Below, piece after piece: positions 1,871 through 30,906 of a DNA stretch of 64,000 bases. The notes beneath the pieces were generated by a model. The model searched no databases. It was not told the DNA's origin and was given only the letters and a program-made list of their open reading frames with translations. The stretch is from positions 18,910,001 to 18,974,000 of the forward strand of contig NC_134474.1 in NCBI RefSeq assembly GCF_964194025.1, in the 5' to 3' direction. Made by a program: the position numbers and the translations under genes. Within the stretch, counting starts at the first letter, position 1. Every line of letters starts with the position of its first letter. The stretch comes from Convolutriloba macropyga (taxonomy: Eukaryota).

Positions 1871-3609
1871 TTAATTCTTTCCTTCTTTCTTGCTCGCCGT
1901 CTTAGTTTGATACAGATTCAGCGCACTCCATTCCGTTAGTACCCCCCACCGCATTTGATTGAAGATTGGAGAACCCCGTTCTCTCTCCTTGTGTTTTTCC
2001 TTACGTAAATTAAAAATTTTTGCTGGTTAGTCCAAGTTTGTTGATTGACATGTCGAAACTCATTGACTTGTATTTGATTGCAGAGATGCTTAAATTTTAA
2101 TGAGAGTTAAAACACCCATGTGCACATTCTAAAATGCCAAAAGTCTACAGTGCCAGAAGTTAAAAGTGCCAGAAGTTCCTATATTCTTAGCCAGAAATGT
2201 GACTTTTTTTATAATTTCGTCATTTTAAAACGTGCACTTTTCCGAGTTTTAAGCAAGGTTTTATGTGACTGCAGAAGTCACTTCAATATTGTGTCTCAAT
2301 ATTTTGAACCGCTTCGCAGTTCTCTATAAACGGCAGAAGTTCTCAGTGACTTCAGGAAGAGTGACATAAATAACCTATACAGAAACGCTTATTTTATACA
2401 GAAACGATTAGTCTGGAGAGTTGTTCTGTAAAGAAGTAATGGTCATGTGACTCTGCTTGAGGTCACTGAGAACTTCTGGCGTTTATCGAGAACCGCGGTT
2501 CGTGATATTAAGCCAGAATTTAGAATTGACGTCTGTAAAGTCACGTAACCTGGCTTAAAACACGAAACGCGCATGTTTCAAAATGACGAAAGTCAACGGA
2601 AGTCAACTTCTGGCTAAGTAGCAACTTCTGGCAATGCAGACTTTCGTGCACGTGAGTGTTTTAATAGTTCTGAAAGATTTTGAAGAAATTGAGCGCGACC
2701 TTTGTCTTTGTTGGCCTCTGCCAAGATGTCTTTGTCAATTCTGGTGTCTGAGTTGAGCCAGTTGATGGCTAGTATGAGGACATCGCTTGCTAACTCTGAC
2801 CTGCACGCTGGCATCTCTATCCCCAGTGCGCGTAGGAAGCGAGAGGGTACCTGCACTGTGCGCTTGTTACTAGTCCACACCGGAACTGCTCTATTTTCTT
2901 GCTCTGAAAGTGGACTCCTTCCGTGATATGATAGAAAGAGGTTGAATGGAATTAATCCCAAGCATTTTTCGGATCTTTTCCGTTTGTCCCCCCCCCCCCC
3001 CCCAGTACGTTATGGACCCCCCAGTTGCAGAGCACGTGTCATTATATAGTAAATCATTAAGTAAAAATATGGCAAATGCGTCTGGGGGGTGCGCCCACTA
3101 AGCTCGGGGCACAAACGGAAAAGATCCCATTTTTCTTAATATAAAATTGTTTATGCAACTAATGAGTCTTGCAGTTCTCGTTTGGTCGAGTTCAGTCGGC
3201 TTATGTTTGAAATAAATTTGTTGCAACTTCCGGGCTCAAGCTTTTCAGTCATAACATTGCGAAGATCATTGACTTTCAGAATTTATTAATTTAATGTCAT
3301 AATTTGTCTTGAAGTAACGGGGAAAATATCTTTGGATCTATTCTGTTTCCACCCCAGCGTAGGAGGCATATAAATTTTATGACCCCCAGGCGCACGCGCG
3401 GTTTTTCAAATAGCAACGTGCAATATAGCAACAATTTGTGACTGGGGTAATAAAAACACGACACGGGGGAACTGGAAGAAAGATCCCTTTGTTCGTGTAT
3501 TTGCATTGCATTCTTACTCACCTGATCTGACATGAGTGGATGTGCTTTTTCTGCCTGATGTCGGCTGTGGCGGCCGATCAGCTGCGCCTCCAGTCGCTGA
3601 CTCGCTCAT
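1871..3609 (-). CDS. Unannotated 3-exon gene (~147 aa), possibly remote SKP1/BTB-POZ-like; the 3' end may extend further
   Basis: Exon 1 3609-3522 (MSESATGGAADRPPQ..., donor CAG|GTGAGT, phase 1). Exon 2 2903-2700 (tttcag|, AAG|GT, phase 1, within ORF 2614-2961). Exon 3 2022-1871 (ctaaccag|, open to TAA). Phases are mutually consistent. Confidence 0.6.
2111..2660. mobile_element. Fold-back MITE with TTAA target duplication (Kolobok/piggyBac-type), intronic
   Basis: Ends are TTAA-AACACCCATGTGCAC and GTGCACGTGAGTGTT-TTAA. The halves are imperfect inverted copies (gccagaagtt, ttcgtcatttt, agaagttctcagtgac blocks). Confidence 0.7.
2971..3127. mobile_element. ~155-bp MITE family A, copy 1
   Basis: TIR GGATCTTTTCCGTTTGT / ACAAACGGAAAAGATCC with a perfect 8-bp TSD CATTTTTC. 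Confidence 0.85.
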
Positions 3610-3653
3610 TGTTGAAAACACTGGTGATAGAGGAGAAAAGCAAACCTTTTTCT

Positions 3654-3858
3654 GAAATGAGGTGGTCGTGAATTGGAAAACGTTTGAATGGAAAATGAAA
3701 TTCTCGATAAACGTCAGAAGTCATTGCTGCGTCTTTGACTGCTCAAGTGCTGAAGGATCTTTTTCTTTTATGCCCCTGTCCAGATTTGTTGCATCGTGCC
3801 CTTGAGCAAGTGCATATAGTTCGACACTTTACTACATTAAATTAAAAGCATCTCTTTC
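3654..3858. promoter_or_regulatory. Putative bidirectional promoter/outron region
   Basis: About 205 bp between two divergent genes, bounded by outward-facing TTTCAG acceptors (minus-strand AG at 3653-3652, plus-strand AG at 3859-3860). Confidence 0.45.
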
Positions 3859-3866
3859 AGAGTGAA

Positions 3867-5585
3867 ATGACTTCAGGAACTACCCGATCTCCTTTGAAAG
3901 ACAAGGATGAATTGTACAGATGCATAATTAGCCAGCTGCTCTACGATGGACACCACGAGCAGGCTCTCTCCTTAATCCAAGTCGTGATGCCCAACCCTGA
4001 ATGTCCACCTTCTGGCCGGCTACTGAGTATCTTCCAAAAAGGTGCAGATCAGTTTGTTTCTGTTAATAAGTTGAGTTTTGTTTAGGGCAAGAATTTCACA
4101 GCCCCAATTTGGTATGGTTAGTCCAGGAATGGGATATTGGGCGAAAGCAATTATTGTAGACATTAGGCGGATTGTATTTCAACTAAAATTTTGGGGTCCT
4201 TCGCATTGCCCCCACCCCCAGAAATTAGACAACTGGGTTAAATTGGGACCCCCGAAATTCAAGTTCAATTGACACTCATGTTTTGTGGACTGACTGGAAT
4301 TTTTACATGAAAAAGCTAAAAATTTAAAGATGGATAAGCGGGGATTTTTACCTCCTCTTTTATAGTTATTCACATTTTAGACAAATGGGGTTATGATATG
4401 GGGCAATGCTGTAAAATTTGCATGTAAATATGAAGTAACTGTTTAGGATTAACCGCGGAATCTGCTGAAAAAAGCGAACAAGAAAAACAGGCACAACTTA
4501 GCAATCCCCTTCTCGCACCCGGAGGAACTCCCGCCCCTACTGCCAGTTCAGGTATTGACCTGGAGTACGAAAGTGATGTACTTATCATGACACCAGAAGC
4601 TGTCAACTACGACACTGTTTACGTAACCAGTCATAAGGACCCTTGTAAGACGACGGGCTTCAGCTATGATGGCCAGTATGTTGCGACTGGATCCGTGGAC
4701 GCTTCGATAAAACTGTTAGACGTTGATAAAATGTTAATCAAAGGTACCTCAGAGGCTGCCAGTGAATCGGCTGATCAGCATCCCGTTATCAAAACGTACT
4801 ATGACCACGTCAATGAAATTACCTGCATTAAATTTCACCCTTTCGATACCTTCATGGCATCAGGAGCTAAAGATAAGATGGTAAAAGTGTATGATTATTC
4901 CAAAACTGCCAGCAAGAAAGCGGTACGAACTTTAGAAGATGTTGAACCAATCAAAGATGTAAGCTACCATCCTGGTGGAGAGTGGTTACTAGTTGCTTGT
5001 CGACACCCAGTTCTGCGTTTGTATAATTTGGAAAACGGTTCCTGCTTTGTCGGAGCAAATCCTAGAGAACATCACACAAAATTTGTGAATGCCGTTGATT
5101 ATGCTCCCAACGGTCGACTGTATGCCAGCGGGGATAAGGCTGGCAATATTAAAATCTGGGACGGAGTTTCAAGTCGTTGTATCCAAAATATTTTGGGAGC
5201 GCACGGCGGGGAACCAATTTGCTCGGTACGGTTTAGTAAAAACTCGCGCTATCTTCTAACCGCTGGCAAAGATTCCTTAGTTAAACTATGGGAGATTGGA
5301 ACCAGTCGAGATATTTTGACGTATACTGGAGCTGGATCCCAGAAAATGACCAAAAGAGTTCCGGCTGTATTTAATCATACGGAAGATTACGTATTTTTCC
5401 CTGATGAAGGCGCGACTAGTTTGTGTTGCTGGTCTTCAAGAAATGGAGAAAGAATGCGGTTGCTGCCGTTAGTACATTCAAGATCTGTTCGTTTTATTGC
5501 ACATTCGCCTGTACATGCAGGTATGATGACCTGTGGTGATGATTACAGGGCTAGGTTTTGGTATGCTAAACCATTGGAGTCATAA
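3867..5585 (+). CDS. CSTF1: Cleavage stimulation factor subunit 1 (CstF-50), 2 exons, ~437 aa
   Basis: Exon 1 3867-4041 encodes the N-terminal dimerisation motif LYRCIISQLLYDG. Phase-1 intron 4042-4446 (GT..AG). Exon 2 4447-5585 has GIDLEYESDV..YVTSHK and WD40 repeats. AATAAA at 5617. Confidence 0.95.
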
Positions 5586-6080
5586 CTTGGTTGCAATATT
5601 GGTCTGGTTTTGCGGAAATAAATCTAGAAACTATTTTACGATAAACTTTTGTTCAGATGTAAACCAATTGTTGTGTTGCTTGTAATTTAATTTGTTTTCT
5701 CCTGTCGTGATGATTTGCAAGTTACTAGATGACGCTGATAGAAGGATGGCTCTCTACATCTCTACATGCAAGAATTTTAACAATATAAGCTGACAACAAC
5801 CTCGAGGCTTTGAATGCAGGTTGAGAGATTAACTTTTGAATGAGCAAGTACTTACAGATAGACCTATTAGTAGTGAGAAATAGAGGGGTGGGGGTTGATT
5901 TGCCGTAAAGTTTTATGATTTCTTCAACCTTGTCTCGAACTCAAGTTCATATTTTCGGATAGAAGTGCTTTCCAAGTAATTAAAATATAAAGAAGAATCA
6001 GTTGAACCCCTCTCTGTACTGATGTATACCGACAGTAAAATTCTCAGTTCAATTTTTCAGACATTTTGATAATTTGTACA

Positions 6081-9000
6081 ATGCCAATTATTTCTGTGGA
6101 CAAAGCGATTGTAGAAAAAGAGTTGGGAGGCGACCTATGTGATGAAACACCATTTGGCGATCTTCTTTTCGACTATGGACTTGAGCTCGATGAAGTAGAG
6201 GAGGACGCCGCTAGTGGAAAAGTGACATACAGAGTGGAGTTACCAGCTAATCGATATGACTTGTTAAGCTCTGAAGGATTGCTCCGAGCGCTGAAAGTGT
6301 TCACGGGGCAGATACCAGAAAGCCCAATGTATAGACTTGTGGAACCCGCGGAACGGATTACTCTCACTGTGGAGGCTAGTACACAGAAGGTCAGACCTTT
6401 TTGTGTTTCGGCTGTACTCCGTGATGTTACATTGTCACAAGCAGCACTTGCAAGCTTCATTGACCTTCAGGATAAATTGCATCTCAATTTGGGCAGGCGA
6501 AGGACCCTAGTAGCAATCGGGACCCATGACTTGGACACTTTGAAACCCCCGTTCGTGTACAAAGCTCTGCCGCCTAAAGATATTAAATTCAAACCGCTCA
6601 ATCAATCGAAAGAGTTCGATGCGGAGGAGTTAATGGAATTCTACAAATCTGATTTGGCGCTGAGAGCGTACTTGAAAATTCTAGAAGATGAGCCGTTGTA
6701 TCCTGTTATTTATGATTCTCAGGATATTGTATGTTCAATGCCTCCCATTATAAACGGAGATCACAGCAAAATGAGTGTAAATACTAAAAATATATTCATA
6801 GAGTGCACAGCTACGGATGAGACAAAAGCCAAAATCGTACTTAACACCATAGTCACTTTGTTCAGTCAATATTGTTCGCAGCAATTCACAGTAGAGCCTG
6901 TCAATGTTGTGTACGAATCCTCTGGTGAAACTAAAAGTCTGCCCCAGTTTAACTACAGAACGGAGAGTGTATCAGGCGCAATGACAAACAAGAAAATTGG
7001 GGTGAATATTCCGGTCCCTCAAATGGCGAATTTATTGACTAAAATGTGTCTAAGTGCGGAGTTACAAAGTGATGGAGATACGATTACAGTGACGATTCCG
7101 CCCACAAGAGCGGATGTGTTGCATGCTTGTGATATCTATGAGGATATAGCAATTGCGTTTGGATACAACAATATTGAGAAGGTCAGTTTGCTATTTGGGA
7201 GTATACAAATGTCATGATCAACTGCCACATCAACACCTTATCCCCATAAGTATTTTCTTAGGAGTATCTTTCGAACAACTTAAAATGGGGCTTCAGGAAA
7301 ACACTTCTCAATTAATTCACCTAACGTGAGAACAAAATATTGATCCATCTTGAAAACTAATCAAAATTGTTGACCTCTCAATGGATAATTTTAATGTGAC
7401 GTTTTAAGATGTAATGTTTTAAGATATGTGACGTTTTAAGATATGTGACGTTTTAAGACAAGTTTTGACAGAAATGTGTTGAATATGAATTGAAGAATAT
7501 TATATAATTGATGGAAGTTACCATCGGAACACCTGAAGATGTCGTATCGTCCCCTTTGACCTGGTACTTTTTAGGTGTTCCCTCCGACGAATACAGTTGC
7601 ACATCAGCTGCCGGTGAACAAACTGAGTGATAAAGTGAAAGAGAATGTGGCAATGAGTGGTTACACAGAGGTGTTCACTTTCTCTCTCTGCTCCAGAGCA
7701 GACATCTCAACCAACATTGGTTACCCAACTGAAGAACAGGCTCTGAAGACTGCTGTGCAAGTGTCAAACCCCGCAACTTTTGAATTCCAGGTATGTATAC
7801 CTTTGAATAAATAGGCTGTTTCCCATTCGTTTGGTACAAATTTTGGTATGATTTAAAACTGCAAAATGTTCTATTTGCTTAATTTTGTCATAATTAATCA
7901 CAAAATATGTCAACTGCGATAAACATTTTATCCAAATTGATTAAATAAAACCACTTCCGAGGTGTATATTGGTTATTAATTGCCCTCGTTCGAAGTTCGA
8001 AGCAATTATTGTAATAGTAAATGGTTAATAACGGCCGTCAGCCTCTTAACGGCTTTGATTTAGGTGCCCTCCTTTTTTTACATTTCAAAGAACTTGAGTT
8101 GTATTTGTGCTCCGTCTTTTCCCATTTCACCGATTTTGAATTGTATCAGGGTGCTGTCGTTTTACGACCCGAAGAGTAGTGATGATAATCTATTTTAATA
8201 GCCGCCGTCAGCCTCTCAACGGCTTTTCACTAGGCGCTCTTTTTACAATTCAAAGAATTTGAATTGTATTGGGGCGCTATCTTTTCTTTTAAGATCTGTT
8301 AACACATTTTTATGATTTTTGAAGTCAAATTGGAGTAGTGATTTTAGTCATGCCGAAACAGGAAGTGGAGCGAAAAAGCGAGTGGTTTTGCGGCGTGACA
8401 TTTTTCAGCTCTAAATTTAAAGTAGAGTGAGAAAATGGTGTTTGAACAAAAATTCGTTTTCTCGCTAGTGGTTTTTTTTGTTCACGTACGGATATTTCAC
8501 TTTGATTTTTACTGTTTTTTTTCAATTTTTTGGATCGGATTTTTTTTTCTAAATGGTTTTCCATTCATAGTTCAATCCATTCATAGTTCATTCTAGGTTC
8601 AATCCATTCATAGTTCATTTTAGGTTCAATCCATTCATAGTTCATTCTAGCCTAGTGTTTTGCTTGAACCAAATGTACATTTCTCGCTAGTGGTTTTTTT
8701 GTTCACATGCGGCATTTTGACATCGGTTTTCTGTTTTTTTTTCACTAATTTTTTGATCTGATTTTTTTTAGAAATGGTTTTTACAATTTTCCGTAGGTCT
8801 ATTTTTTTGCTTATTCAATGAAAATTCTTTGAATTGTACATCAGGTCTCATCCTGTTATGTTTTTAAACTTGTTTACCTCTCGTTCACATTTTTCCTTTC
8901 ACATAAGTCATGACTTTCACGTTTGACTCTTGTCCTACTTCACTCACTGTTTCAGCTGAATGGATTTGAAATTCTTTTCCGTATGTAGTGTCACGTTATC

Positions 9001-12000
9001 AATTACGTAATGTAGCGAATACGGTCAAATAAATCCCGGTCATTGAGTCATAATGCATTAGATTATCAAAGTTCATTAAAGTGATTGCTAGGTGGCATTA
9101 GTATTATGTTTAATAGAGTTCAGTTTGGAAGCTGAATTAAGTGTAATTTTTGAATCTAACCGCATATGCAGAATTTGCACAACAAATAAGAGCACTTTGA
9201 CACTTAGAAAAATTGTGTCAATTTCTATCGCTTAATTTTTTTTCTGTTGCAATCCCGAGGTGCGTCAAGTGGGTCAACTATTTCCCAATGTCGTTATGTG
9301 GCGACTTTTTTTCCGACAATTTGTCGGCTACGTTTTTGATTCTAGTTTTAATGTTTGATGAATCAAGGTTTTTTGGCTAATATTAATGGCAAATGTTTGC
9401 GTTTTACTCATCTTCAGTCTTTAAGTTTTGTTGCTCTATTATCAGTGTTTTCAGGAGCCTTAATAGATGTCTTGGCTGTTAATCTACAGTTTTTGTGGAA
9501 TGCATTCTGTTTCGGCGCCCAGTGTTTTTATGCTCCCTCACTTGCAAATTATGTATTCTTAAATTGTACGTTACTATATCAAAATAGCACGTGCGTCTGG
9601 GCGCGTAAAAGCTATAAGCCAAGGAGACGAAATGAATAAAATCATTTTTTGGATATGGTTTTCTCGTTTAACTTCCTATTCAGTGATAACAGAATCTTGT
9701 TAACTTTTCAGCAATGTTTCCTTGAAATATCAATTTCAATTGCTGCTGAAAAAATTTAGAGCAATTATTGTAAACGTTTGGTTTTTAATCGAAAATTGTC
9801 GCTTGTCTGTATTGATAGAAAATTCTTTTGCTCGCGTGAGCAATTTAAATTGACTTTCTTCAAAAACAGAATAAACAGGTTATCCATACGGTCATGTCTG
9901 GTTTATCAGAGAATCAAAGGGAGAAAATGTTTGGCACTAAACCATCGAGGCAGCTCAATTTAATCTATTAGTTTGCCATTAAATTTTAGTAACGCACATG
10001 GAAAATACATACGCAATAGAAGTATGTTTTTGCAATTTACTTGTTTAGTTTTCTTGCCTACGTAGTTGCAATCCTAAGGATAAACTTGCTTGCCCTACTT
10101 AATCGCTCTCGCACTCTTAAAATCTCACTAATTACTGAGAAAAAGCATCTAATTTTTACACTTTCTTTCTCTAAAGAACTTAGAACATAAATCATAGTCT
10201 CTCTTGCTCGTGCCTTATGCCCAGCACTCGGGCAAAAGTGCCCTCGTGTCCGGGCACTAAGCTACTAGGGTGATTAAGTTTATGTTGTAACATAAATTTA
10301 AGTTGCTAAGTTCACTATAGCTGATGTTCCTCTCATTCGTTTTCTGCCTATACTTTTCTTGTATACTCTACCTCCGCGGGCACGGCGGCTGTTCTGAGAC
10401 CTGATGTAGCTGCAGCCTAACAAGCCAACCAACTTCAGTTCGAAAGTAATTCGCCCGACGGTAGTGGGTTTGTTTTCTTTTTCGATAAAGTTGTCCCACA
10501 GAAATTAGAGCTGTAATTAGAACTGCGTGTTCAAGATCTCTGCATAATTTGTTGAATGAATTGAGAGTTTTTTGAACATTTTCGATAGGCAAAAACTGAA
10601 AAATGATAAAAGCATGTTTGCGTAACTTAACTTGGGCCAAAATTCGCTGACGGTGAAATTTGGTTAAGCGGAATAGAAAGTGACGCACGGCATTCTAGCT
10701 TTCTAGACTGGTGATTGTTGTATGAATGAAATTGTTTGTACTATGACCCCGGCTTTATTAGATGGACTTCTGCTTCCCAATAGATCGCCTGAGCTTCATT
10801 ATTTTTTTAGTTTGCTTTTCTTATTTTTGTACTCAGATGCAGTTAGATCTAAACCCAAAGTTACCAACAATTTTGTCCATTTTATCAATGATTCAATTCT
10901 TGTATTTTGATTTTCTATCAGGGGTATTCAGGGATAAATTTTCTGGTTTTATTTTTAATCCTTGTTTTAGCTAAATGTGTTTTCGTTTATCAAAGTTAAC
11001 AGTATTAATGGGAAGGTTTTTTAAATTTTCGGAGCAATATTTTGTTCAAGGAAAACTAAAGGTAGAGATATCTACCGTGGTTTTTTAACATTCTTTATAT
11101 TCGAAAAAGGCTATTTGAAAAAGGCATTGAACTTTGTGTTCAGTTCGAATTCAGTTTCATTGATTATTAAAATTCAATTTTTAAATGGAGTCACTCTGTT
11201 AAACATCTCTGCTTAAATTGCTGGCTTGATGTTCTCTTTTGTGAAATCGTATGAGTCAAAATATTTTTTCCAGCAATCGATTAATAAAAAATGAGCCTAT
11301 AATTTGTTAAGTTTCAGTTTCATACATTAACATTTGGGTGTTGTGAGCTTCTCAAGCTTTTTATTATCTGGAAGTGCCTACTGGTTGTATAGAGCACTAG
11401 TATAGAGAAATTTATTCGAATTTTGTATTTTATAATTTTCAATTAATCAAACGAGGTAATTGCGTATTAATTGATGTGAAAGCCCAGATCAATGGTTGTA
11501 AATTGTTTTGATCTGTCTTTTCCTGGTTTTCTCAATAATCTAAAGCGAAGATGTAGCTGCTTCTTTTGGATTTGTATTCCTCTTGTCTTTCTCTCTACAT
11601 GTTAAATTGACAATGGTGGAAATGATCGCTCCAACTGCCGTTATCATTCCACTCCAAGGTACTATAAGGCTCCAACCAACTTTGGAACGTACTTCTTCCT
11701 CGAGGAATTGAGATCGATTGCCGTAGATTCCAAAATAGATTGCAGAATGCTTGGACTGCGCGTCACTTATGGCCATTGTCTGTTAAAAGAGAGCGAACAC
11801 AAAAGTTTTAACAATTTTTAAAGCGAGGCTTGTTTTTGACTGAAAAACGGTTTTTGCGAGACCTCTTAGAATTTCGGATACTTTCTAGCCATTTTGAACA
11901 CCATAGATTTGTTGAGTAGAAGCTTTTTCAAATGATATCAATATAATATGAAAAATTTTGTGGTGAATTATTTCATTAATTATCAGCTTGCCTGTAGTAT

Positions 12001-13305
12001 ATTGGCGACCAGCAACATGAATGCATGCAACACTGTCAAAATGGTCACATTCACGTCAAACAATAAATTCCTTGTTAATATTACTCCCGCAAGAAGTAAG
12101 CATGTCGTCAAAATTGCTGCAACGTAGTAAAATATGAACCACATCCTCGCAGCTGTCCATATTTTTGATATCGTTGTGTATGAATTACATTTATTTGTGG
12201 TGATATTACCTTCGACCTGATAAGAGCACATTTTCCACAATCCGAAACATTGTTTGCTGGACTTCTCAACTCTGAATTCTTTGGAGCAGTTTCCGAGCAC
12301 AGTAAGTGCCAGACCAAGACTCAGCAGAACGCAAATTGCAGCCGTAGCAATCATTAATTGATTCCTTTTGACCATTGTTTTGATGAATGGAAAATTGTCA
12401 GTTCTTAAATTGAATCTATACGCACTTCGTTGAAATTCGAAATTCCCAGAATTGGTTTGAATTTTACTTGATCATATAGCCATCAAAGATCATATTGCGC
12501 CTTTGTGTAGTTGATAAATTGCGATTGAGGTTGATGTTTGAGACAATTTGATAATTGTAAACTGTGGCTATTTAGAAGGACAATAGTTGTCCTAATGTCC
12601 AATTGTTAGTTTTCTAAATCGAGTCTCGTAAATAAAATCTTGAGGATATCTATCTATGAACCGATTTTGATTCTCATATGTAAAATGCTTCGGTTGCATA
12701 AAAGAAATTAAATCTTAAGGCGAATTTGGTGAACCACATAAAAACTCTTCTACTTAATTAGAAACTGAGAAAGAAAAACATCACTGGTTTTCAAAGTAGT
12801 CAATGATTTTATTCTAATTCGTGTACATAAATTGAACTTTAGTTTCAATCTGTTTCAGGTTGTGCGAACTTCTTTGATTCCTGGACTTCTGAAGACTGTG
12901 GCCAGTAACCGAAAAATGGCACTCCCTCTGAAGCTGTTCGAGCTATCCGACGTTGTGCTCTTGGACACGGCAAAGGATGTTGGCGCTCGAAACGAGCGAC
13001 GACTCGCTGCTATATTTTACGGGAAGTCCAGTGGGTTTGAAGTGATTCACGGCCTGTTAGATCGTGTTATGCAACTTCTGGAGGTTAAGGATGGCGATTA
13101 CGCAATCAAAGAAGCGAATGACGCAATGTTTTTTCCTGGACGTTGTGCTGAAGTTGTATGCAGTTGGAGTCCGAATAACGAAGGAGATAATAAGACCTTC
13201 AATCTGGGAAAGATGGGAGTTGTGCATCCAAACGTGTTGAAAAACTTCGATCTTAACTACCCCTGCTCTGTTCTGGAGCTCAATATGGAACCATTTGTTC
13301 TATAA
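6081..13305 (+). CDS. FARSB: Phenylalanyl-tRNA synthetase beta subunit, 3 exons, ~587 aa
   Basis: Exons 6081-7181, 7575-7790 and 12859-13305, joined by phase-0 GT-AG introns. Motifs PANRYDLLS, FIDLQDKLH, SMPPIING, PPTRADVLHACDI, EFQ|VVRTSLIPGLLKT, FEVIHGLLDR. Confidence 0.96.
8020..9300. repeat. Dispersed T-rich repeat fragments in FARSB intron 2
   Basis: The gccgtcagcctctYaacggct block occurs at ~8035 and ~8203, and gtcaaattggagtagtgattt is shared with ~48670. 8930-9280 resembles 43960-44060 and 49790-50170. Confidence 0.55.
8561..8650. repeat. 27-bp minisatellite, about 3 copies
   Basis: Unit ttcaatccattcatagttcattctagg repeated in tandem. Confidence 0.8.
11540..12375 (-). CDS. Claudin/PMP22/EMP-family tetraspan protein (~207 aa), nested in FARSB intron 2
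   Basis: Exon 1 12375-11992: TM1, GLWKMC...C loop, TM2-3. GC-AG intron 11991-11780 (CAG|GCAAGC...ttttaacag|). Exon 2 11779-11540: VGWSLIVPW TM4 and C-terminal -SSL. Confidence 0.8.
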
Positions 13306-13670
13306 ATTCAATGAAAAGTGATAAAATTGATCTATGTTGACGTGATTTAATGCTTGTACAATACATCCGCCTTAATTGTTTGTATTTTGCAAATATTTCT
13401 GCTAAATTAATTGTTTCGCATAGCATGGTTTAAGAATTTGCTGGAAGGATAAAAAATTTAATTATCAGTTTTTCAATCTTTTAATCCGAAGAAGCGAGAA
13501 AGAATCTTTGGACTGGTACAGTTTCAATCTGGCAGATAATAGCTTAATGCTTTCCCAGGGGTGTTAGATAAAACATTTTAAATAAGAGACAGAAGTTCTT
13601 CGCATGTAGTTTTTATAACAATCCTTTTTTGAACTATATCCATGATTGTAACTGAGAATGATTATTTCAG

Positions 13671-14693
13671 ATGAGTAAACGGAAACTCGTCAACCCTGAC
13701 GAGAACCCGAACCATGAGTTCTGCGATATCCTGAACGAGCTGTCTATTTTCGAAAGGACAGTTGAAAACAACACATTCAAAGCCAATGCGTACAAAAAGG
13801 CTGCAAGTGCAATTGCTAAACACCCAACTAAACTCACGAGCCAGGAAGAGGCCCTCAAAATTCCGGGAGTTGGAAAACAAATTGGTCTCAAGTTTGAAGA
13901 GTTTTTGAAAACTGGAACTTTAGAAAAATTGAATAAGATTAAGAAAGATGACAATGCCTCTGCAATTACTGAGTTGACTCGCGTTTCTGGAATTGGCCCA
14001 GTGGCAGCTCGGAAATTGGTAACTGAAAAAAATATCAAATCTCTGGACGATTTAAGAACGAATACACAGCTTTTAAATTACCATCAGGAAATTGGGTTAA
14101 AGTATCTTGAAGAATTTGAGGAACGGATCCCGAGGTCGGAAATGCTGAAATGGGACTCGCTATTATTGAAAATAATTGCCAAGTTAGATTCAAAATATTC
14201 AGCAGAACTGTGCGGCAGCTTTCGACGGGGAGCAGAAACGTGCGGCGATATTGATATGTTAGTGACGCATCCTGATAGCCAAGCTGTTGGATCACCAAGT
14301 AAGAAAAACAACCCGATGCTTGTTAAAATTGTGAATAAATTGGTTGAAGATGAATTAATAACAAATGTTTTGGCGCTTGGAGGATCGAAGGTCGCAGCTG
14401 TTTGTCAATTACCGGGTGAAGAGAAAGTTGTTCACAAGCATAGGCGATTAGATATTAGACTTATTCCCAGCGACCAGTATCATTTTGCGTTGCTATATTT
14501 CACAGGAAGTGATCTATTTAACAAGAATATGAGAGCGCATGCCCTTGAGAAGGGTTTCACCCTGAACGAGTATGCAATCAAACCGGTCGGAAGCACGGGG
14601 GTTGCGGGTCAACCTATACCTGTAAAAAGTGAGAAAGAAATATTTGAAATTATTGATTACGAATACAAAGCACCCGAGCAGCGGGTTTCGTAA
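13671..14693 (+). CDS. POLB: DNA polymerase beta (family X), intronless, 340 aa
   Basis: MSKRK N-terminus, NAYKKAA, HhH motif IPGVGKQI, GSFRRG, DID and RLD catalytic aspartates, YFTGS, FTLNEY. AATAAA at 14736. Confidence 0.96.
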   Translation: MSKRKLVNPDENPNHEFCDILNELSIFERTVENNTFKANAYKKAASAIAKHPTKLTSQEEALKIPGVGKQIGLKFEEFLKTGTLEKLNKIKKDDNASAITELTRVSGIGPVAARKLVTEKNIKSLDDLRTNTQLLNYHQEIGLKYLEEFEERIPRSEMLKWDSLLLKIIAKLDSKYSAELCGSFRRGAETCGDIDMLVTHPDSQAVGSPSKKNNPMLVKIVNKLVEDELITNVLALGGSKVAAVCQLPGEEKVVHKHRRLDIRLIPSDQYHFALLYFTGSDLFNKNMRAHALEKGFTLNEYAIKPVGSTGVAGQPIPVKSEKEIFEIIDYEYKAPEQRVS

Positions 14694-15513
14694 ACAGTTC
14701 GATAGTTAGGTTTTACTTGTTAAAGTTTATTGTTTAATAAAGTTTGTCTTGATGTCTTTTTTCTAATTTCTCAAATTAATGGAATGACAAATTTTTTGTC
14801 ATTTTATTTAGTATTTGAGTCAATTGTGATGGCGAAAAAGCTGACAGGTATCAGTTACCATGTCAAAGGAGTGTAAAGTAAAAGTACTAAAATGTCAATG
14901 GCAAAATTCTAAATGAATAACGACGATTTGCGCTGTTTAAATTGTCCTTTTAGGTCTCCACGAGGTTACAATAAGTTTGAACCTACCAATAAAAATGGCT
15001 GTTGATTTTTTCTTGATAGTTTGAAACTTAATCAAGTTGGTTTGATGAAATTATTACAGGATTATGCAAGGTAATCGGGCCAACACGATTTCAAAATGAA
15101 AGTTTTTGAGCGGCTGTTTTTGGTACCTTGGAGCTGACACCACCAATGTTTGAAAAGCTGATGCTCTTTGTCGATTTTGGGTGCTCAGACATCTTCTTTG
15201 ATCAAGAGGTACTCAAATGGGAGTATTTTGAGCTCAAGTTCTAGGTGATGAAATTTGTCAAAGCAAGATTTTAATGTCTGATTATGTTGTTTTCCTAGAG
15301 CAGCTAAAAGAGCGTTTGAAACCGCTGAGCCAAACAGCACTATAATGAAAGTGGCCCAGTACTAAGGCTTTCATTAGCTTGATTAATGGTTTTATTTTTG
15401 CTTATCAAACATTTTAAACCAGAATCAATAGTTGGTTGATAAACGTAGTTCAATGATACTGTAGTTTTTCTCTATCTTTATTGTGCTAATTTTAGCTAAA
15501 TTAGTAAATTAGT

Positions 15514-16522
15514 AAAGAAAATAGTAAACAAAAAACTTGTTTGATAAATCAGAGCAACGCAGAGGCCAGTAAAAAAGAAAACATCAAAATAGAGAGTCGC
15601 AAGAGCTTCATGGTCTCAAGGTCTTCAAAAACAAAAACTGTAAATTTATAATTGATGCATTAGCGCAGTACCGCACAAAACTTTCATCGAAGGCTTGAGT
15701 TCAGAAAATTTGAACATGACAAAAAACATGCCCAAAACATAAAATATAGCAAATAATTACAATTCTTCATGCTTTGTAGTTCCAAAATTTTCAGTAGATG
15801 ATTCAAAGCAACTATATTTTTGGACTATGAGAATTCTATTTGCAAACATAATAGACAAACACAATCAGCAACGTTAAAAAAATGAGTTGAAAAATTGGTA
15901 CAATTAGAAAAAAAGTTGCTCCATTTCTCGCAGCCTAATCCGTCAGAATCGCCTTTTTTGCCACTAAAATCAACCCATAAACTTACGCACAAGCTCTAAA
16001 AAATTAGCGCAATTTTTGCTAAATTAGCTAATTTTTTAGAGCTTGTGCGTAAGTTTATGGGTTGATTTTAGTGGTAAAAAAGGCGATTCTGACGGATTAG
16101 GCTGCGAGAAATGGAGCAACTTTTTTTTCTAATTGTACCAATTCTTGAACTCATTTTTTTAACGTTGCTGATTGTGTTTGTCTATTATGTTTGCAAATAG
16201 AATTCTCATAGTCCAAAAATATAGTTGCTTTGAATCATCTACTGAAAATTTTGGAACTACAAAGCATGAAGAATTGTAATTATTTGCTATATTTTATGTT
16301 TTGGGCATGTTTTTTGTCATGTTCAAATTTTCTGAACTCAAGCCTTCGATGAAAATTTTGTGCGGTACTGCGCTAATGCATCAATTATAAATTTACAGTT
16401 TTTGTTTTTGACGACCTTGAGACCATGAAGCTCTTGCGACTCTCTATTTTGATGTTTTCTTTTTTACTGGCCTCTGCGTTGCTCTGATTTATCAAACAAG
16501 TTTTTTGTTTACTATTTTCTTT
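15514..16522. repeat. Near-perfect ~1-kb palindrome (inverted duplication)
   Basis: Arms 15514-16008 and 16027-16522 are reverse complements with about 5 substitutions and 1 indel seen; 18-bp spacer. Confidence 0.95.
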
Positions 16523-17466
16523 TCTTGGTTTCTTACGCTTTTGATTGAACTTTGGTTTTTTCAGCAGGTTCAACCAATAATGATAGATATTTTGAATGCT
16601 TTTATATTTGTTTTTCTCTAAATTGGTAAAGCAGTGTACGTTTGGCTCGTAATGTTCAGTTGGTCAGGTAGAATAATTTTTAATTTTTTAATTCTTTCGC
16701 TGGATGACAATTTTAGGACCTGTCCAGATTTTCATTTTTTTTCGTTTTACCTAATCGTTTACCTATTCGCTTAACATCCAATTGAAGAAACAAGCTGCTT
16801 AAATTAAATGAGTTTCTGATGACCGCCAGATTACTGTACCTCGCTGCAATGTTTCATTTTTTCGAAATTAAATCAGTTTGACGTTTCTTGTTTTTAAGTA
16901 ATAAGCTGCCGACAATTAAGCAGCAGCTATGAGGAAATTAACATTGGAAATACTATCCGAGAGAGTTATTGTTATTACGGATAGCTCAAATTAAGGGCCG
17001 AAAGTCAATTGAATTGTCAAATCGGTTTAATATATTATCGGTTCAAATTTTAAATTATAATTTATTACACTTATTTTTTAACCGGTTTCCAAAGCCTTGA
17101 TAAATTCTTGCTCTTCTGCTCGAAAAATTGGTGAAAGTATATTTAAATTGAGACCCAATTTTTTTGCCAAACGTTTTGCCATGTTTTAATGGTGTCTCAT
17201 TTAGTTTGTCAATTTTCATAAAAAGAATAATTTCACTGGTATTGCTGTTTGCCCCCAATTGGGAACTCATCACAATTTGTCTTACATATCATTAAATACA
17301 TAATGCTTTGTTTCAAAAGCTTCCTCTCCGTAAAATTTGTTAAAAGATGAGTGAGGAATGAACGTCTGAACCTTATATATGATTGCACATAACCGAACCT
17401 CCTGGTTTCAGAATATGTTTGTCAGAGTATGTTTGTCTTAACTAATTTTTATTTTAGAGTAGCACA

Positions 17467-18273
17467 ATGAAAACTGTTCTTAGTGAAACGAGTCAGTATA
17501 ATTTGAATTATGAGCCTTCTGTTAAAGAATCTCTAAAAGCAGGTCTGATTTCGAAGAAAAAGAAATTCTCCAAGTTGGACGCTGCAGCTTTCAACTTTTC
17601 CGATATGTTTTCATTCCGAGATGAAAATGACGGTAACACGAATTTGCAAAATGATCAGGAGAATGTCCCTCAAGAAAATGAAAGCAGCAATGACAAATCA
17701 AGGTTTCAGTCACTAAAGAAATCCAAAAAGTTGGCGTTCAAAGCAAGTTCTTTTTTCCACGCGAAACCATTGCAATCAAGCTCAGCGTCAAACGCGAAAG
17801 CAAATACCTCAAACTCAACCGGTGACAGTTCGACCTCGAAAAGGTACAGCTCTCCCGCGAGAAAAGCAAGAAATTCGATGCCAAAAGGTGTGCTGATAAC
17901 GGAAGAATTGATATCAAGAGTTTGCAAAACAGCCGATCAGAAAGAAAAATTGGACAAGAAAGATTTCCCAGAAACGTATTGTCATCAATGTCGAATCAAG
18001 TCAGCAGATACGAAAACTGTTTGTCATTCTGAAGATTGCAACAAAGGTCGAGGGATGTTATGTGGCGTGTGCTTGAACATGTGGTACAATGAGGATGCGG
18101 CTGAGGCTCTTAGAAACAAAGAATGGGTTTGTCCATCTTGTAGAGGAATTTGCGAATGTGCTTTGTGCAGGGATAAAAGAGGACTGCACCCTTTGCCTAA
18201 AACGGTGGCGTCAACTGCGCTAATGCTCGGGTTTTCTTCAGTGAAGCAGTATTTACAATCCCGAGAGAATTAA
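17467..18273 (+). CDS. CDCA7: CDCA7/CDCA7L-like protein with C-terminal zf-4CXXC_R1 domain, 268 aa
   Basis: CHQCRIK..C..C..GRGMLCGVCL..WY..WVCPSCRGICECALCR..GFSSVKQYL aligns to the CDCA7 zinc finger; the N-terminus is low-complexity. Confidence 0.82.
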   Translation: MKTVLSETSQYNLNYEPSVKESLKAGLISKKKKFSKLDAAAFNFSDMFSFRDENDGNTNLQNDQENVPQENESSNDKSRFQSLKKSKKLAFKASSFFHAKPLQSSSASNAKANTSNSTGDSSTSKRYSSPARKARNSMPKGVLITEELISRVCKTADQKEKLDKKDFPETYCHQCRIKSADTKTVCHSEDCNKGRGMLCGVCLNMWYNEDAAEALRNKEWVCPSCRGICECALCRDKRGLHPLPKTVASTALMLGFSSVKQYLQSREN

Positions 18274-25651: not shown

Positions 25652-26268
25652 TTTAGTAACGTGGTATGTAAGAACTCATATTTTGTAAAGGGGGGTAGTT
25701 AAAAGAAGAAGAAGAAGAAGAATTTATTTCTCTGATACAAAATAATAATACTAGCAACACAAAGTCTAATATATATTTAGCACAGAGGGGACAGCAGACG
25801 GAACCAATTAGTTCACTTGAAGCTGCCCTAATCCAAAAACATTGTATTACAGAAAATGAATAATTATCAACTAAGTCCATTTAAGTATCCCAATCTCACC
25901 AATGCAAGTAAAAAAAAACGAAAAATTAAAAAAAAGAGTAACTTAAAAAAATTGAAATTGTTTTGCATTTTAGCTACCTGACTGATGTAGAGCATACTGA
26001 GAGGCTTTGAAGTGATGCATGATTTGTTTGAGGGAAGGGGTACGTTACATTGATCAAGCTTAGGTTCTGACACCCAAGTGTCAAGATTCCAAAACCCAAG
26101 ATCTATGTAACGTTGACAGACTTCCTCCCCCTGCAACGAACAACCCACGCCACTTTTGTGGCCAGGAATTCTTAGAAGTTCGTTAAGAGGAAGTCTGACT
26201 GCTCTATTCACTATACTATACTTTAACTATCCAAACACAAAGTCAGTTAAGTCTATATTGCCTAGATC

Positions 26269-29104
26269 TTATAGATCCCTTATACTATGAACAATTTTGG
26301 AAAAAAATGCATTATCTATCTCAAGAGGTGTTTCAAGAACACCGTTTTCAATCAGCAAGTTGAACAATTTAGCTCCTCTAAAGGCTAACGAACATTTTTT
26401 AAACCTGTTTGACTTGGAAGGCAATTTTAGAAGATTTTGTTGAGCACTGCGCGTTAAACGGGGGTTTTCTTTATATTGAAACAGGTTATTCATATATTCC
26501 TCCGAATGCAATTTTCCAGCAGAACGAAGAACACATTTCAGAAGCTCATATATGTACAGTTCATAGACCGAAAGAATTTTATTCTGGACAAAAAGATTAC
26601 CAACATGCTCGTCTTTTTTCATGAAATAGATTGTACGCAATATTTTCTTTTGAAGAATATGAATAGGCTTTAATGCATTCAGCGATGTACATCCATAAAC
26701 TAAAATTCCATACTGAATTATGGGTTTAACGTTTGTATCATAAAACCTCAGCAAGAAAACTCTAGGAACTAAGTGCCTTAGCTTGCACAAAATTCCACAC
26801 TGAACACTAAGTTTTTTACAAACTGTTTCGATATGGTAATTGTACTTAAGTTGATTGTCCAAAACAATTCCTAAGTACTTGCAGTGCGATTGGGAAACTT
26901 GAAACGATCCAGCTATGTTTAGATAACTAGAATCTGGAGTCACATTATTGAAATTAACATGCACCGTTTTCTCTAAATTCAGTGTTAATTTGTTATTTAA
27001 CAGCCAAGTGTTTACACTAGCTAGATCCACTTCCAGCTCATTTCTGGAGCAGTTAATGCCCGCAATGTTAGTATCGTCAGCAAACAGAAACACGTCACTG
27101 CTATTACATGCCTTAGGGAGGTCGTTTATATAAATGATGAACAACAAAGGGCCTAGAATTGAACCTTGAGGAACGCCGTATTTTATATCAGACAGCTTAG
27201 ATCTTACACCATTTACTTCAACACACTGTTTACGATTGCTTAGAAAACTTTTCATCCAATTTTTACAAGGACCCACTAAGCCATAAAGATCAAACTTTCT
27301 GAGTAAGATTTTATGGTCAATTGTATCAAAAGCTTTCTTTAGATCAATGAAGACAGTTGCCGTTGTTTTTCTATCATTATGTTCTCTTACTTTTTCCGTA
27401 AATTCAGCTATGGCGTCAATAGTACAATGCTTGCGCCTAAAACCAAACTGTTTCTTGTGTAAGAGATTGTTGCTTTCAAGATAATTATGGATCCTGGAGT
27501 AAGCTATTTTTTCAAAGATTTTGCCCCAACATATTAAAAGAGAGATGGGCCTGTATTCATTTCAGCAAGCTTTATTTCCTGATTTGAAAAGGGGAAAAAC
27601 TTTTGCGATGGACAAGGCCGTAGGGAAAATACCCTGATGGAAGGACATATTAACTAGTTTTGATAGATAGGGAGCCACTACGTCTTTACAAGCCTTTATT
27701 ACTTTGGAACATACGTCGTTTAAACCACAAGAAGTTTTATTTGATAGGTTATCAATGACATCAGATATCTCCTTTACATTGGTATCATAGAACCAGATTG
27801 AAAAATTAGTGTGCTGACTGAAAGCATTCCTATTTAAGGGAATTTGAACACATGAATTGACGAGTTTTTCTCCAACAGAAGAGAAAAAAGAGTTCATTTC
27901 TTGCGCTATATCAAATGGTTTTGTTAATTGTCCGAACTCTGTTTCCAACATAGGTATTTGATCTGACTTTTCATTTTTGCCCTGAAGATCATTTAATATT
28001 TTGAAAACTTTCCTCGAGTCACCCAGACATTTTTAAAATTTCTTAAAATAGTAATTACGCTTGCATCTTTTGCTCTCTTTTTCAACTCCGTATCTCAAAA
28101 AGAGATAATTTCATTCGCAAACTGGCGTTATTCCGATCTTTGGACCATTGGTCATGTGCTTTATTTCTTTTGTTGATCAAATTTTTTAGATTGTTAGTTA
28201 ACCATTTAGGTTTCAGATTTGATTTATGACAATAAACTTTCATAGGAGCATAATGATCAAAAACCAGCTGAAAACAATGTTGGAAGGAATTGAAGCATTT
28301 ATTCATTTCACCCTTTAATTCAATTTTTTGCAACTGATGACTCAATGTAAAACAAAACATCTGACTTCACTTGAGATTTTATAAACGAGATATCTCGAAA
28401 ATTTAACTCTGGTTTAAAATTGCTATGTTTGGCAACAATTTCAAGGGAAATTGGATAGTGATCTGAGAAACTTTTTTCATCTTTGTGAGTTTTAATCTTG
28501 CCTTCCACATTTTTTGTTATAAAATGGTCGATACAGGAATCCGTAGAAGTTGAAATTCTTGTCGGATTGCTATTTAGCAGCTCGAAGCCATTACTATTAA
28601 TAATATCAAAATAGGCTGCTGTTAGATCATTTTTCTTCAAAATGTTGATATTGAAATCACCACAAATGATAACGCTAGAGTCTTTTTTACTTAAACATTG
28701 TAAGGTTTCTTCAAGGCGTGCGAGAAACTCCATTTTGTTATTTCTCGGAGGATTGTAAACAACCAATATGAAGTAGTATTTTTATTTGCTTCTACTTTAA
28801 TCAGAAGGCTTTCATCTAAGTTGCACTGTTCCTCAGCGACTAATTTTACTGCTTCTCGGCATTGAATCATTACACCTCCTCCACGGTAGGGTCTTGTTTT
28901 AGAAACGAGCGTTTTATAGCCTGATAACTTGAAGCAATACGGTGTCATATTATCTTTAAGCCAGGTTTCTGTTAGACAAAGAATATCAGGGGGTGACTCG
29001 AGGTAGCCTAGTTGTGACTCCAGTTCATCATAATGTTTTACTAATGATCTTGTATTAAGATGAAAAATTATTAAAGAAAGTTGATCAGTTTTTGTTTTCG
29101 GCAA
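26269..29104 (-). pseudogene. LINE ORF2 (AP endonuclease + reverse transcriptase), disrupted
   Basis: HLNTRSL, LTETWL, GDFNIN, CIDHF, SDHYPI; YRPISLL, QFGFR, DLKKAFDTIDH, GVPQGSILGP, FADDT. Split over at least 5 ORF fragments by frameshifts and stops (e.g. in-frame TGA at ~27562). Confidence 0.92.
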
Positions 29105-29155
29105 CTTTTTATTTAATTGCTAAAACGATCGATTATCAAAGCAGAATTGTACATC

Positions 29156-30073: not shown

Positions 30074-30906
30074 CTCTATTTAATAAGTTTATCACAACAT
30101 TTAGGCTAAACACTGGGTTGCATAAAAACACTGGGTTCCAGAACACAATAGATCCCATTTTTGATTGTTAATAAAGAATCGAGGTCCCCTTTAGATTTGG
30201 ACTCAATTGGCTGCTGCAGCGCACCCCCTTTTTGGGCTGTGGTTTCAACCTCGACAGTACCCATGGAAACAGGGAGAAAGGAAATAGAATTGGTTCCGAA
30301 GTTTTCCTGTTTCGAAAAAGTTTTGCTCTCCATTAAGTTTTGCGCATGCTGCCAACGTTTAGCAATGGTAACACTGAAGTAGTGTGGAACCAATAGTGTT
30401 GCATATCCTCTTCTATTTAGATATCTATTCTATTAATCGAAGAAATTTTGCTTGAATAAGTAAATTTTTTCCGTATTATTCTACTTGTTTGAGCGATAAT
30501 TGCTAACAGAATATCGCAAGTACAGTCTTTTTTCTTACAGTATTTTATGATTGTTGTCAAAACTGAAGGAACGCTGATCTTGATGCTTAAATTGTTATGT
30601 AATATTAATGTCCGCTGCATGAAGTGGAAATGCGTACAGATAGTGAAGAGAAATTAATAGCTTTTTAATATAGCTTTTTAGATATGTCGCAAGAGAATGT
30701 GTGTAAAAGGCGCGCGCTCGGTGTCCGAATTTTAAACTAGGCTACAACTTAACATCTGCTGTTCTAGATTTAGCATGTCTGTTGGTCAAATATTATCGGC
30801 AAATACTTATGCAAGCTCTTCTTAATTACGGCTTCTATTCCAACTAATTCTCGTACATTCCTAATTTACATTCTTTTCTTCGTGGATCAAATTTTATCGC
30901 ACAACA

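What the first reader, a model, noticed from the sequence alone, without database searches (positions are those of the whole stretch)
3609..17467. Acceptor just before the ATG of each non-nested gene: candidate SL trans-splicing and a CSTF1-FARSB-POLB operon
Seen: tctctttcag 6 nt before the CSTF1 ATG, atttttcag 20 nt before FARSB, atttcag immediately before POLB, ttttag 9 nt before CDCA7-like, and atttcag ~42 nt before the minus-strand gene. CSTF1 stop to FARSB acceptor is 475 bp and FARSB stop to POLB acceptor is 365 bp, on the same strand, with AATAAA soon after the CSTF1 and POLB stops. Known: nematode, tunicate and flatworm operons are resolved by polyadenylation plus SL trans-splicing at such acceptors, and CstF takes part in this coupling in C. 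elegans. Inference: a polycistronic housekeeping unit. Short cis 5'UTR introns cannot be excluded, since weak GT sites exist in the spacers.
Basis: partly seen in the sequence, partly recalled or inferred. Interest (0 to 1): 0.75.

Follow-up and report, generated by a model that had tools for sequence, protein, structure and literature searches.

The report
Spliced-leader acceptors before clustered acoel genes
In the acoel worm Convolutriloba macropyga, the splice signals just before the start codons of five tightly packed housekeeping genes are most likely where the animal's shared 31-base RNA leader is added. Whether three of these genes are also transcribed together as an operon remains unproven.

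Summary
A TTTYAG motif lies within 45 nt upstream of only 7% of random ATGs in this window.

The window is Convolutriloba macropyga chromosome DNA; its proteins match the RefSeq models at 100%. The spliced leader (SL) published for the acoel Symsagittifera roscoffensis occurs unchanged in this genome. It is present as large tandem SL RNA gene arrays with a GT donor, and as an SL-headed LINE inside the window.

RNA contigs of related acoels carry the SL tail at the homologous acceptor:
- FARSB: two good cases.
- POLB: one case, only 6 nt.

An acceptor-like site precedes all 15 orthologous gene starts in four acoel genomes.

SL trans-splicing is therefore well supported for FARSB and POLB, and likely for CSTF1, the CDCA7-like gene and the minus-strand gene.

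The operon is not shown. CSTF1>FARSB>POLB order is conserved in four genomes, but so are neighbours outside the proposed unit. Spacers range from 0.2 to 3.9 kb, one with a retroelement-like insertion. No RNA of this species was available.

The scan has already found SL-acceptor clusters on other pieces of this genome.

The parts
3522..3653 (-). Minus-strand gene. Acceptor AG at 3653-3652, first exon 3651-3522 with ATG at 3609. Second exon 2903-2614. Small protein of about 126 aa with no Pfam family.
   Evidence: Read on the minus strand. No Pfam hit for exon 2. Exon 2 is conserved upstream of CSTF1 in L022. Exon 1 is conserved head-to-head with CSTF1 in L022 and L029.
3859..3860 (+). Candidate SL trans-splice acceptor of CSTF1 (tctctttcag), 6 nt before the ATG at 3867.
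   Evidence: Acceptor-like sites lie 13, 31 and 70 nt upstream of the ATG in the three other acoel genomes. No transcript evidence.
3861..5585 (+). CSTF1 gene. Exon 1 is 3861-4041 (CDS from 3867), exon 2 is 4447-5585. AATAAA at 5617-5622.
   Evidence: 100% tblastn match to XP_075250254.1. Poly(A) signal.
5586..6060 (+). CSTF1-FARSB spacer, 475 bp. About 420 bp lie between the AATAAA and the FARSB acceptor. It holds a TATAAA at 5986 and one GTGAG donor-like site at 5873.
6059..6060 (+). SL trans-splice acceptor of FARSB (caatttttcag), 20 nt before the ATG at 6081.
   Evidence: Orthologous RNA contigs L023 and L024 carry 20 nt and 9 nt of the SL 3' end, joined 23 and 11 nt before the ATG. The L024 junction falls exactly after the genomic AG of the closest genome, L022.
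6061..13305 (+). FARSB gene. Exons 6061-7181, 7575-7790 and 12859-13305. The 5.1-kb second intron holds an unconserved minus-strand ORF (11983-12375).
   Evidence: 100% match to XP_075250253.1, 587 aa. The same three-exon structure appears in orthologous transcripts.
13306..13670 (+). FARSB-POLB spacer, 365 bp. The first ~110-150 nt are FARSB 3'UTR by homology, which leaves about 215 nt before the POLB acceptor. It has no AATAAA, no GTRAG donor and no TATA-like site.
   Evidence: The L025 transcript aligns to the window as far as 13415. Only this 3'UTR block and the acceptor are conserved among four species. Motif counts.
13669..13670 (+). SL trans-splice acceptor of POLB (attatttcag), directly abutting the ATG at 13671.
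   Evidence: TTTCAG|ATGAG is invariant in four acoel genomes and in the second haplotype. The orthologous metatranscriptome contig L026 starts AAATAG|ATG, which is the last 6 nt of the SL and not the genomic TTTCAG.
13671..14693 (+). POLB gene, a single exon of 340 aa. AATAAA at 14736-14741.
17456..17457 (+). Candidate SL acceptor of the CDCA7-like gene (ttattttag), 9 nt before the ATG at 17467.
   Evidence: Acceptor-like sites lie 9 nt (S. roscoffensis) and 31 nt (L022) upstream of the orthologous ATGs. No transcript evidence.
17467..18273 (+). CDCA7-like gene, a single exon of 268 aa with a zf-4CXXC_R1 domain. It lies 2.76 kb downstream of POLB.
   Evidence: Pfam PF10497, E = 2.6e-27.

Best explanation
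The AG sites are 3' splice acceptors for spliced-leader (SL) trans-splicing. C. macropyga makes a roughly 100-nt SL RNA from large tandem gene arrays. Its first 31 nt are joined at these acceptors to the pre-mRNAs of the minus-strand gene, CSTF1, FARSB, POLB and the CDCA7-like gene. This removes whatever lies upstream (the outron) and leaves 5'UTRs of SL plus 0-42 nt. For POLB the leader runs straight into the ATG.

The four plus-strand genes form a compact, co-oriented block that is conserved among acoels.

Shown: the SL RNA genes, the acceptors and their conservation, and the SL on orthologous FARSB mRNAs.

Inferred: use of each acceptor in this species.

Undecided: whether FARSB and POLB are reached by read-through from the CSTF1 promoter or have promoters of their own.
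For: 1. The SL published for S. roscoffensis (PMC9911081) has 2,612 matches with up to 3 mismatches in this genome, against 0 for the reversed control.
2. SL plus GT has 1,636 matches. These include arrays on contig 9 with units of about 1.06-1.8 kb. One unit shows the 31-nt exon, a GTAAT/GTAAG donor inside a stem, a U-rich Sm-like stretch and a GC stem-loop.
3. The leader is used in this species. A LINE in the window (about 25.9-30.1 kb, minus strand) begins with the SL followed by its ORF, like the SL-headed copies seen.
4. The orthologous FARSB RNA contig L023 starts with 20 nt of the SL 3' end. L024 starts with 9 nt of it, followed by exactly the bases that follow the genomic AG in L022.
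5. The orthologous POLB RNA contig L026 reads AAATAG|ATG, whereas all four genomes read TTTCAG|ATG.
6. All 15 orthologous gene starts have a pyrimidine tract plus AG 0-70 nt upstream, while the rest of the spacers cannot be aligned.
7. Five of five is far above the 7% background.
Against: - No RNA of C. macropyga was available, so no junction was seen in this species.
- The POLB evidence is only 6 nt, from an unidentified relative.
- CSTF1, the CDCA7-like gene and the minus-strand gene have no transcript evidence at all.
- The CSTF1 acceptor distance is not conserved (6 to 70 nt).
- No SL-joined retrocopies of CSTF1, FARSB or POLB exist in the genome.
Confidence: 0.8

Rival explanations
1. True operon. 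One promoter in the 209-bp region between the two divergent acceptors (3651 and 3861) drives a CSTF1-FARSB-POLB precursor. This is resolved by 3' cleavage of each upstream cistron and SL trans-splicing of the next. It extends the best explanation rather than replacing it.
For: - The genes are co-oriented.
- The estimated gaps from poly(A) site to acceptor are about 420 and 215 nt.
- The FARSB-POLB spacer has no TATA-like site and no conserved block besides the 3'UTR and the acceptor.
- The same gene order and strand hold in four acoel genomes with POLB at 68-77% identity.
- In S. roscoffensis the synteny break lies exactly upstream of CSTF1.
- The rest of the window (18.5-64 kb) has few long ORFs, and those tested are LINE-derived.
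Against: - No precursor RNA was seen.
- Stop-to-acceptor spacers range from about 212 to 1,594 bp (CSTF1-FARSB) and from 323 to 3,929 bp (FARSB-POLB).
- The S. roscoffensis FARSB-POLB spacer holds a reverse-transcriptase-like insertion.
- Neighbours outside the unit are conserved too: the minus-strand gene in 3 genomes and the CDCA7-like gene in 3. Synteny is therefore not operon-specific.
- A TATAAA lies 75 nt before the FARSB acceptor.
- The gaps are longer than the roughly 100 nt typical of nematode operons (general knowledge).
- The library search found no relevant paper reporting acoel operons.
Confidence: 0.3
2. The genes are independent but all trans-spliced. Each has its own promoter in the spacer and a short outron, and SL addition merely trims the 5' end. 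The block is kept together by ordinary microsynteny or shared chromatin.
For: - About 30% of S. roscoffensis genes are SL trans-spliced, and that paper does not use the word operon.
- Spacers tolerate large length changes and a transposon insertion.
- There is a TATA-like site upstream of the FARSB acceptor.
- The divergent minus-strand gene, which cannot belong to the same unit, has the same kind of acceptor.
- Synteny extends beyond the proposed operon.
Against: - If 30% of genes are trans-spliced independently, five of five neighbours is unlikely. Enrichment of SL use among housekeeping genes would soften this.
- No promoter-like conserved block is visible in the FARSB-POLB spacer.
Confidence: 0.5
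3. The sites are acceptors of ordinary cis-spliced 5'UTR introns, fed by short non-coding first exons in the spacers.
For: One GTGAG donor-like site lies in the CSTF1-FARSB spacer at 5873, and two lie in the POLB-CDCA7L spacer.
Against: - Orthologous FARSB transcripts start with the SL, not with spacer sequence.
- There is no GTRAG in the FARSB-POLB spacer.
- No block that could be an upstream exon is conserved.
Confidence: 0.07
4. The sites are chance AG dinucleotides in AT-rich upstream sequence and have no splicing role.
For: The DNA is 30-35% GC, so T-rich runs are common.
Against: The background rate is 7% per gene start, against 5 of 5 here and 15 of 15 across species. TTTCAG|ATG is invariant within a spacer that otherwise cannot be aligned.
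Confidence: 0.02

Closest known systems
SL trans-splicing of Symsagittifera roscoffensis (Martinez et al. 2022, PMC9911081)
   Same: The leader sequence is identical. The SL RNA gene has a GT donor. Acceptors lie just upstream of start codons. The same four genes sit in the same order in that genome.
   Different: The species is different (POLB 77% identical). Here the junctions are inferred rather than mapped from this species' RNA. That paper reports 30.2% of genes as trans-spliced and does not mention operons.
Caenorhabditis elegans SL2-type operons
   Same: Co-oriented housekeeping genes, with the upstream gene's poly(A) signal followed by the downstream gene's trans-splice acceptor.
   Different: Only one SL type was looked for and found here; no SL2-like leader was sought. 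The estimated gaps of about 215-420 nt (up to 3.9 kb in a relative) exceed the typical roughly 100 nt. Co-transcription is not shown.
Single-SL operons of tunicates and flatworms (Ciona, Oikopleura, Schistosoma, Macrostomum)
   Same: The same SL serves both monocistronic and downstream genes, so the leader itself does not mark operons.
   Different: Those operons usually have very short or no intercistronic regions (general knowledge). The spacers here are hundreds of bases long and variable.

Membership tests
Metazoan SL trans-splicing system | SL RNA gene with a short 5' exon, a GT donor, an Sm-like site and stem-loops, usually in tandem arrays | tested here: met
   1,636 SL+GT matches, with arrays on contig 9. 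One unit has the 31-nt exon, a GTAAT/GTAAG donor inside a stem, a U-rich Sm-like stretch and a GC stem-loop. The Sm-like stretch fits the consensus only loosely.
Metazoan SL trans-splicing system | The same non-genomic leader joined to mRNAs at an AG acceptor | tested here: inconclusive
   Met for orthologues in related acoels: FARSB in L023 and L024, and POLB in L026 with only 6 nt. Not observed for these genes in C. macropyga, because no RNA run was served. An SL-headed LINE in the window shows that the leader is used in this species.
Metazoan SL trans-splicing system | An acceptor with a pyrimidine tract upstream of the start codon and no matching cis donor | tested here: met
   All five sites. 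There is no GTRAG in the FARSB-POLB spacer and only one in the CSTF1-FARSB spacer. Acceptor-like sites are conserved at 15 of 15 orthologous starts.
SL-resolved operon | One promoter and a polycistronic precursor spanning the genes | not testable with these tools
   No RNA reads of the species were available. No retrocopy or second copy spanning the CSTF1-FARSB spacer exists.
SL-resolved operon | Short, constrained intercistronic regions between co-oriented genes | tested here: inconclusive
   Stop-to-acceptor distances here are 475 and 365 bp. The relatives show about 212-1,594 bp and 323-3,929 bp, one with a reverse-transcriptase-like insertion.
SL-resolved operon | Gene order conserved more strongly than that of flanking genes | tested here: inconclusive
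   CSTF1>FARSB>POLB holds in 4 of 4 genomes. The CDCA7-like gene (3 of 4) and the divergent minus-strand gene (3 of 4) are kept too. Only S. roscoffensis breaks synteny, directly upstream of CSTF1.

The most novel reading that the evidence does not exclude
CSTF1-FARSB-POLB is a genuine SL-resolved operon conserved across at least four acoel species. It would be the first operon documented in Xenacoelomorpha. Its intercistronic regions would be unusually long and elastic, 0.2-3.9 kb, and able to tolerate a transposon insertion.
Probability: 0.3. Interest if true: 0.55.

Novelty: new member of a known kind. Interest (0 to 1): 0.35.

Why it matters
SL trans-splicing in acoels is already published for a sister species, so these acceptors are mainly useful for correct gene-start annotation in the new C. 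macropyga genome.

The open point is whether acoels have operons. Xenacoelomorpha sit at a disputed position near the base of Bilateria. A conserved operon there would add a lineage to the scattered distribution of SL-resolved operons. It would also offer a compact four-species test case with elastic spacers. The public RNA-seq of this species can settle the question in a single mapping run.

Tried and rejected
- **RNA evidence in this species.** The one run search returned four runs with even depth over exons, introns and spacers, so they are DNA. No joints and no SL loose ends appeared.
- **Loose ends at 4882 and 6057.** Single-contig loose ends at these places in all four DNA runs briefly suggested a copy ending at the FARSB acceptor. 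Extra depth was confined to the two bins holding these ends. A genome search with 4700-6300 found only the locus itself. This was dropped as short matches and remains unexplained.
- **SL-joined retrocopies.** Searches for CSTF1, FARSB and POLB retrocopies in the genome, with up to 3 mismatches, found none.
- **Rfam.** No match in the window at gathering thresholds.
- **Metagenome scan 1.** SL tail plus POLB start gave 0 hits.
- **Metagenome scan 2.** Genomic acceptor plus POLB start gave more than 120 chance hits, none encoding POLB.
- **CSTF1 transcripts.** The protein search found no acoel transcript contigs, only genomic entries.
- **CDCA7-like gene.** The representative search gave two likely acoel orthologues, judged by length and identity. 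I did not look up their contigs, so I cannot say whether transcript evidence exists.
- **Spacer alignment.** Alignment across species showed no conserved block that could be called a promoter or an upstream exon.
Full report
**What is there.** Reading the window and a script confirm every coordinate in the finding.

| Gene | Acceptor AG | Motif | ATG | Gap to ATG |
|---|---|---|---|---|
| CSTF1 | 3859-3860 | tctctttcag | 3867 | 6 nt |
| FARSB | 6059-6060 | caatttttcag | 6081 | 20 nt |
| POLB | 13669-13670 | attatttcag | 13671 | 0 nt |
| CDCA7-like | 17456-17457 | ttattttag | 17467 | 9 nt |
| minus-strand gene | 3653-3652 | catttcag | 3609 | 42 nt |

- The stop-to-acceptor spacers are 475 bp (CSTF1 to FARSB) and 365 bp (FARSB to POLB).
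- AATAAA follows the CSTF1 stop by 31 nt and the POLB stop by 42 nt. None follows the FARSB stop.
- TTTYAG occurs 0.0016 times per nt in the window. It ends within 45 nt upstream of only 7.4% of all ATGs, so five of five is about 2e-6 by chance (post hoc).

**Organism and gene models.**
- The window is G000 contig 7, in a genome of 1,175,981,408 bases. That size matches the published Convolutriloba macropyga assembly (PMC13650328).
- The RefSeq C. macropyga proteins XP_075250254.1 (CSTF1, 437 aa) and XP_075250253.1 (FARSB, 587 aa) map to the window at 100% identity.
- CSTF1 has exons 3867-4041 and 4447-5585.
- FARSB has exons 6081-7181, 7575-7790 and 12859-13305.
- POLB (340 aa) and the CDCA7-like gene (268 aa, zf-4CXXC_R1) are single exons.
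- The minus-strand gene has two exons (3651-3522 and 2903-2614) and no Pfam family.

**The leader exists in this genome.**
- Earlier notes of this scan named the species and a 31-base leader. I tested this independently.
- The SL published for Symsagittifera roscoffensis (PMC9911081) has 2,612 matches with up to 3 mismatches in this genome. The reversed control has none.
- With GT appended there are 1,636 matches. These include long arrays on contig 9 with units of about 1.06-1.8 kb.
- A fetched unit shows a 31-nt exon, a GTAAT or GTAAG donor lying in a stem with the exon, a U-rich Sm-like stretch and a GC stem-loop. This is the usual SL RNA layout.
- Copies not followed by GT are SL-headed retrocopies. 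One such LINE lies in the window itself: SL at 30076-30097 on the minus strand, then the ORFs, with endonuclease and reverse-transcriptase domains. The leader is therefore joined to RNAs in this species.

**Evidence at these genes.** No RNA run was served. The four runs returned cover exons, introns and spacers evenly and are DNA. I therefore looked for orthologous transcripts.
- **FARSB, contig L023.** This Logan RNA contig (ERR1712226; protein 82% identical over exon 1) begins with 20 nt that are the exact 3' end of the SL. A further 23 nt lead to the ATG.
- **FARSB, contig L024.** This contig (SRR19329409) begins with 9 nt of the SL end. It continues with exactly the 11 nt that follow the genomic AG in the closest genome, L022, whereas the genome upstream of that AG reads differently.
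- **POLB, contig L026.** This JGI metatranscriptome contig of a POLB orthologue (70% identical) begins AAATAG|ATG. All four acoel genomes read TTTCAG|ATG there. The match is only six bases but fits the SL.
- **CSTF1, the CDCA7-like gene and the minus-strand gene.** No transcript was found.

**Comparative anatomy.**
- POLB relatives led to three other acoel genomes: S. roscoffensis (77% identical) and two unnamed ENA assemblies (68% each).
- All three carry CSTF1>FARSB>POLB on one strand.
- The CDCA7-like gene follows in S. roscoffensis and in L022.
- The divergent minus-strand gene is kept head-to-head with CSTF1 in L022 and in L029.
- In S. roscoffensis a co-oriented TRP-like channel gene lies upstream of CSTF1 instead.
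- Every one of the 15 orthologous starts has a pyrimidine tract plus AG upstream:

| Gene | Distance from AG to ATG across species (nt) |
|---|---|
| CSTF1 | 6, 13, 31, 70 |
| FARSB | 20, 18, 11, 11 |
| POLB | 0, 0, 0, 0 |
| CDCA7-like | 9, 9, 31 |

- In the FARSB-POLB spacer only a 3'UTR block and the acceptor are conserved.
- The second haplotype of C. macropyga keeps the POLB and CDCA7-like acceptors intact. That contig does not reach the CSTF1 and FARSB acceptors.

**Trans-splicing verdict.** The sites are SL acceptors. This is well supported for FARSB, reasonably supported for POLB, and inferred by analogy and conservation for the other three. A cis 5'UTR intron is unlikely. The orthologous FARSB mRNAs start with the SL, and the FARSB-POLB spacer has no GTRAG donor.

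**The operon question.**

*Points in favour:*
- The genes share a strand.
- The FARSB 3'UTR reaches at least about 13415-13450 by homology. That leaves about 215 nt to the POLB acceptor.
- About 420 nt separate the CSTF1 AATAAA from the FARSB acceptor.
- Gene order is conserved in four of four genomes, and the one synteny break lies exactly at the left edge of the block.
- The remaining 45 kb of the window holds few long ORFs, and those tested are LINE-derived.

*Points against:*
- No precursor RNA was seen.
- Spacers vary from about 212 to 1,594 bp and from 323 to 3,929 bp. The S. roscoffensis FARSB-POLB spacer holds a reverse-transcriptase-like insertion.
- Genes that cannot be part of the unit (the minus-strand gene), or that lie 2.8 kb away (the CDCA7-like gene), are conserved and carry acceptors as well.
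- A TATAAA sits 75 nt before the FARSB acceptor.
- In SL organisms, trans-splicing is not restricted to operons (general knowledge). In S. roscoffensis 30% of genes are trans-spliced.

I put the operon at about 0.3.

**Novelty.** SL trans-splicing in acoels is published, and this scan has already reported SL-acceptor clusters and SL-headed LINEs on other pieces of this genome. This locus is a further instance. The library search found no relevant report of operons in Xenacoelomorpha, so that part would be new if shown.

**Dead ends.** These are listed under Tried and rejected.

Noticed in passing
window 25867-30105 (-): A LINE-type retrotransposon with endonuclease and reverse-transcriptase domains. 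Its 5' end is the animal's spliced leader: 22 of 22 nt exact at 30076-30097, and the full 31 nt with one mismatch. The first ORF's ATG follows directly. Its opening bases after the leader match SL-headed copies elsewhere in the genome (L002, L004, L005).
   Followed up: partly
window 15511-16525: A near-perfect palindrome of about 1 kb in the POLB-CDCA7L spacer: 404-nt arms at 99% plus inner 101-nt arms. The second haplotype (L150) lacks about 540 nt of this stretch (window 15487-16026). It is either a haplotype-specific inverted duplication or an assembly artefact.
   Followed up: partly
window 4882 and 6057: In all four DNA runs, one contig fits the window only from 4882 onward and another only up to 6057, 3 nt before the FARSB acceptor. 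Each has 255 unrelated letters beyond. The assembly holds no second copy of 4700-6300. Unexplained; probably short shared words.
   Followed up: partly
window 11983-12375 (-): A 130-aa ORF nested in the large FARSB intron. It has no Pfam family, no strong acceptor before its ATG and no match in the three other acoel loci, so it may not be a real gene.
   Followed up: partly
L020 7708-9203 (S. roscoffensis): The FARSB-POLB spacer of S. roscoffensis is 3.9 kb. It contains a minus-strand stretch similar to the reverse-transcriptase ORF of the window's LINE. The POLB acceptor is nevertheless kept.
   Followed up: partly
L150 1-2516 and window 7800-12850: The two haplotypes of C. macropyga differ strongly inside the large FARSB intron. 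The other haplotype carries an RT/RNase H element, while exons and spacers are 96-97% identical.
   Followed up: no
window 7395-7460 and 8560-8650: Short tandem repeats in FARSB introns: units gacgttttaagat(a/g)t and ttcaatccattcatagttcatt.
   Followed up: no
G000 contig 9, 23.14-23.78 Mb and 62.06-62.12 Mb: Very large clusters of SL RNA genes in both orientations, with several unit lengths (about 1.06, 1.25, 1.44, 1.63 and 1.8 kb). This suggests several array subfamilies.
   Followed up: partly
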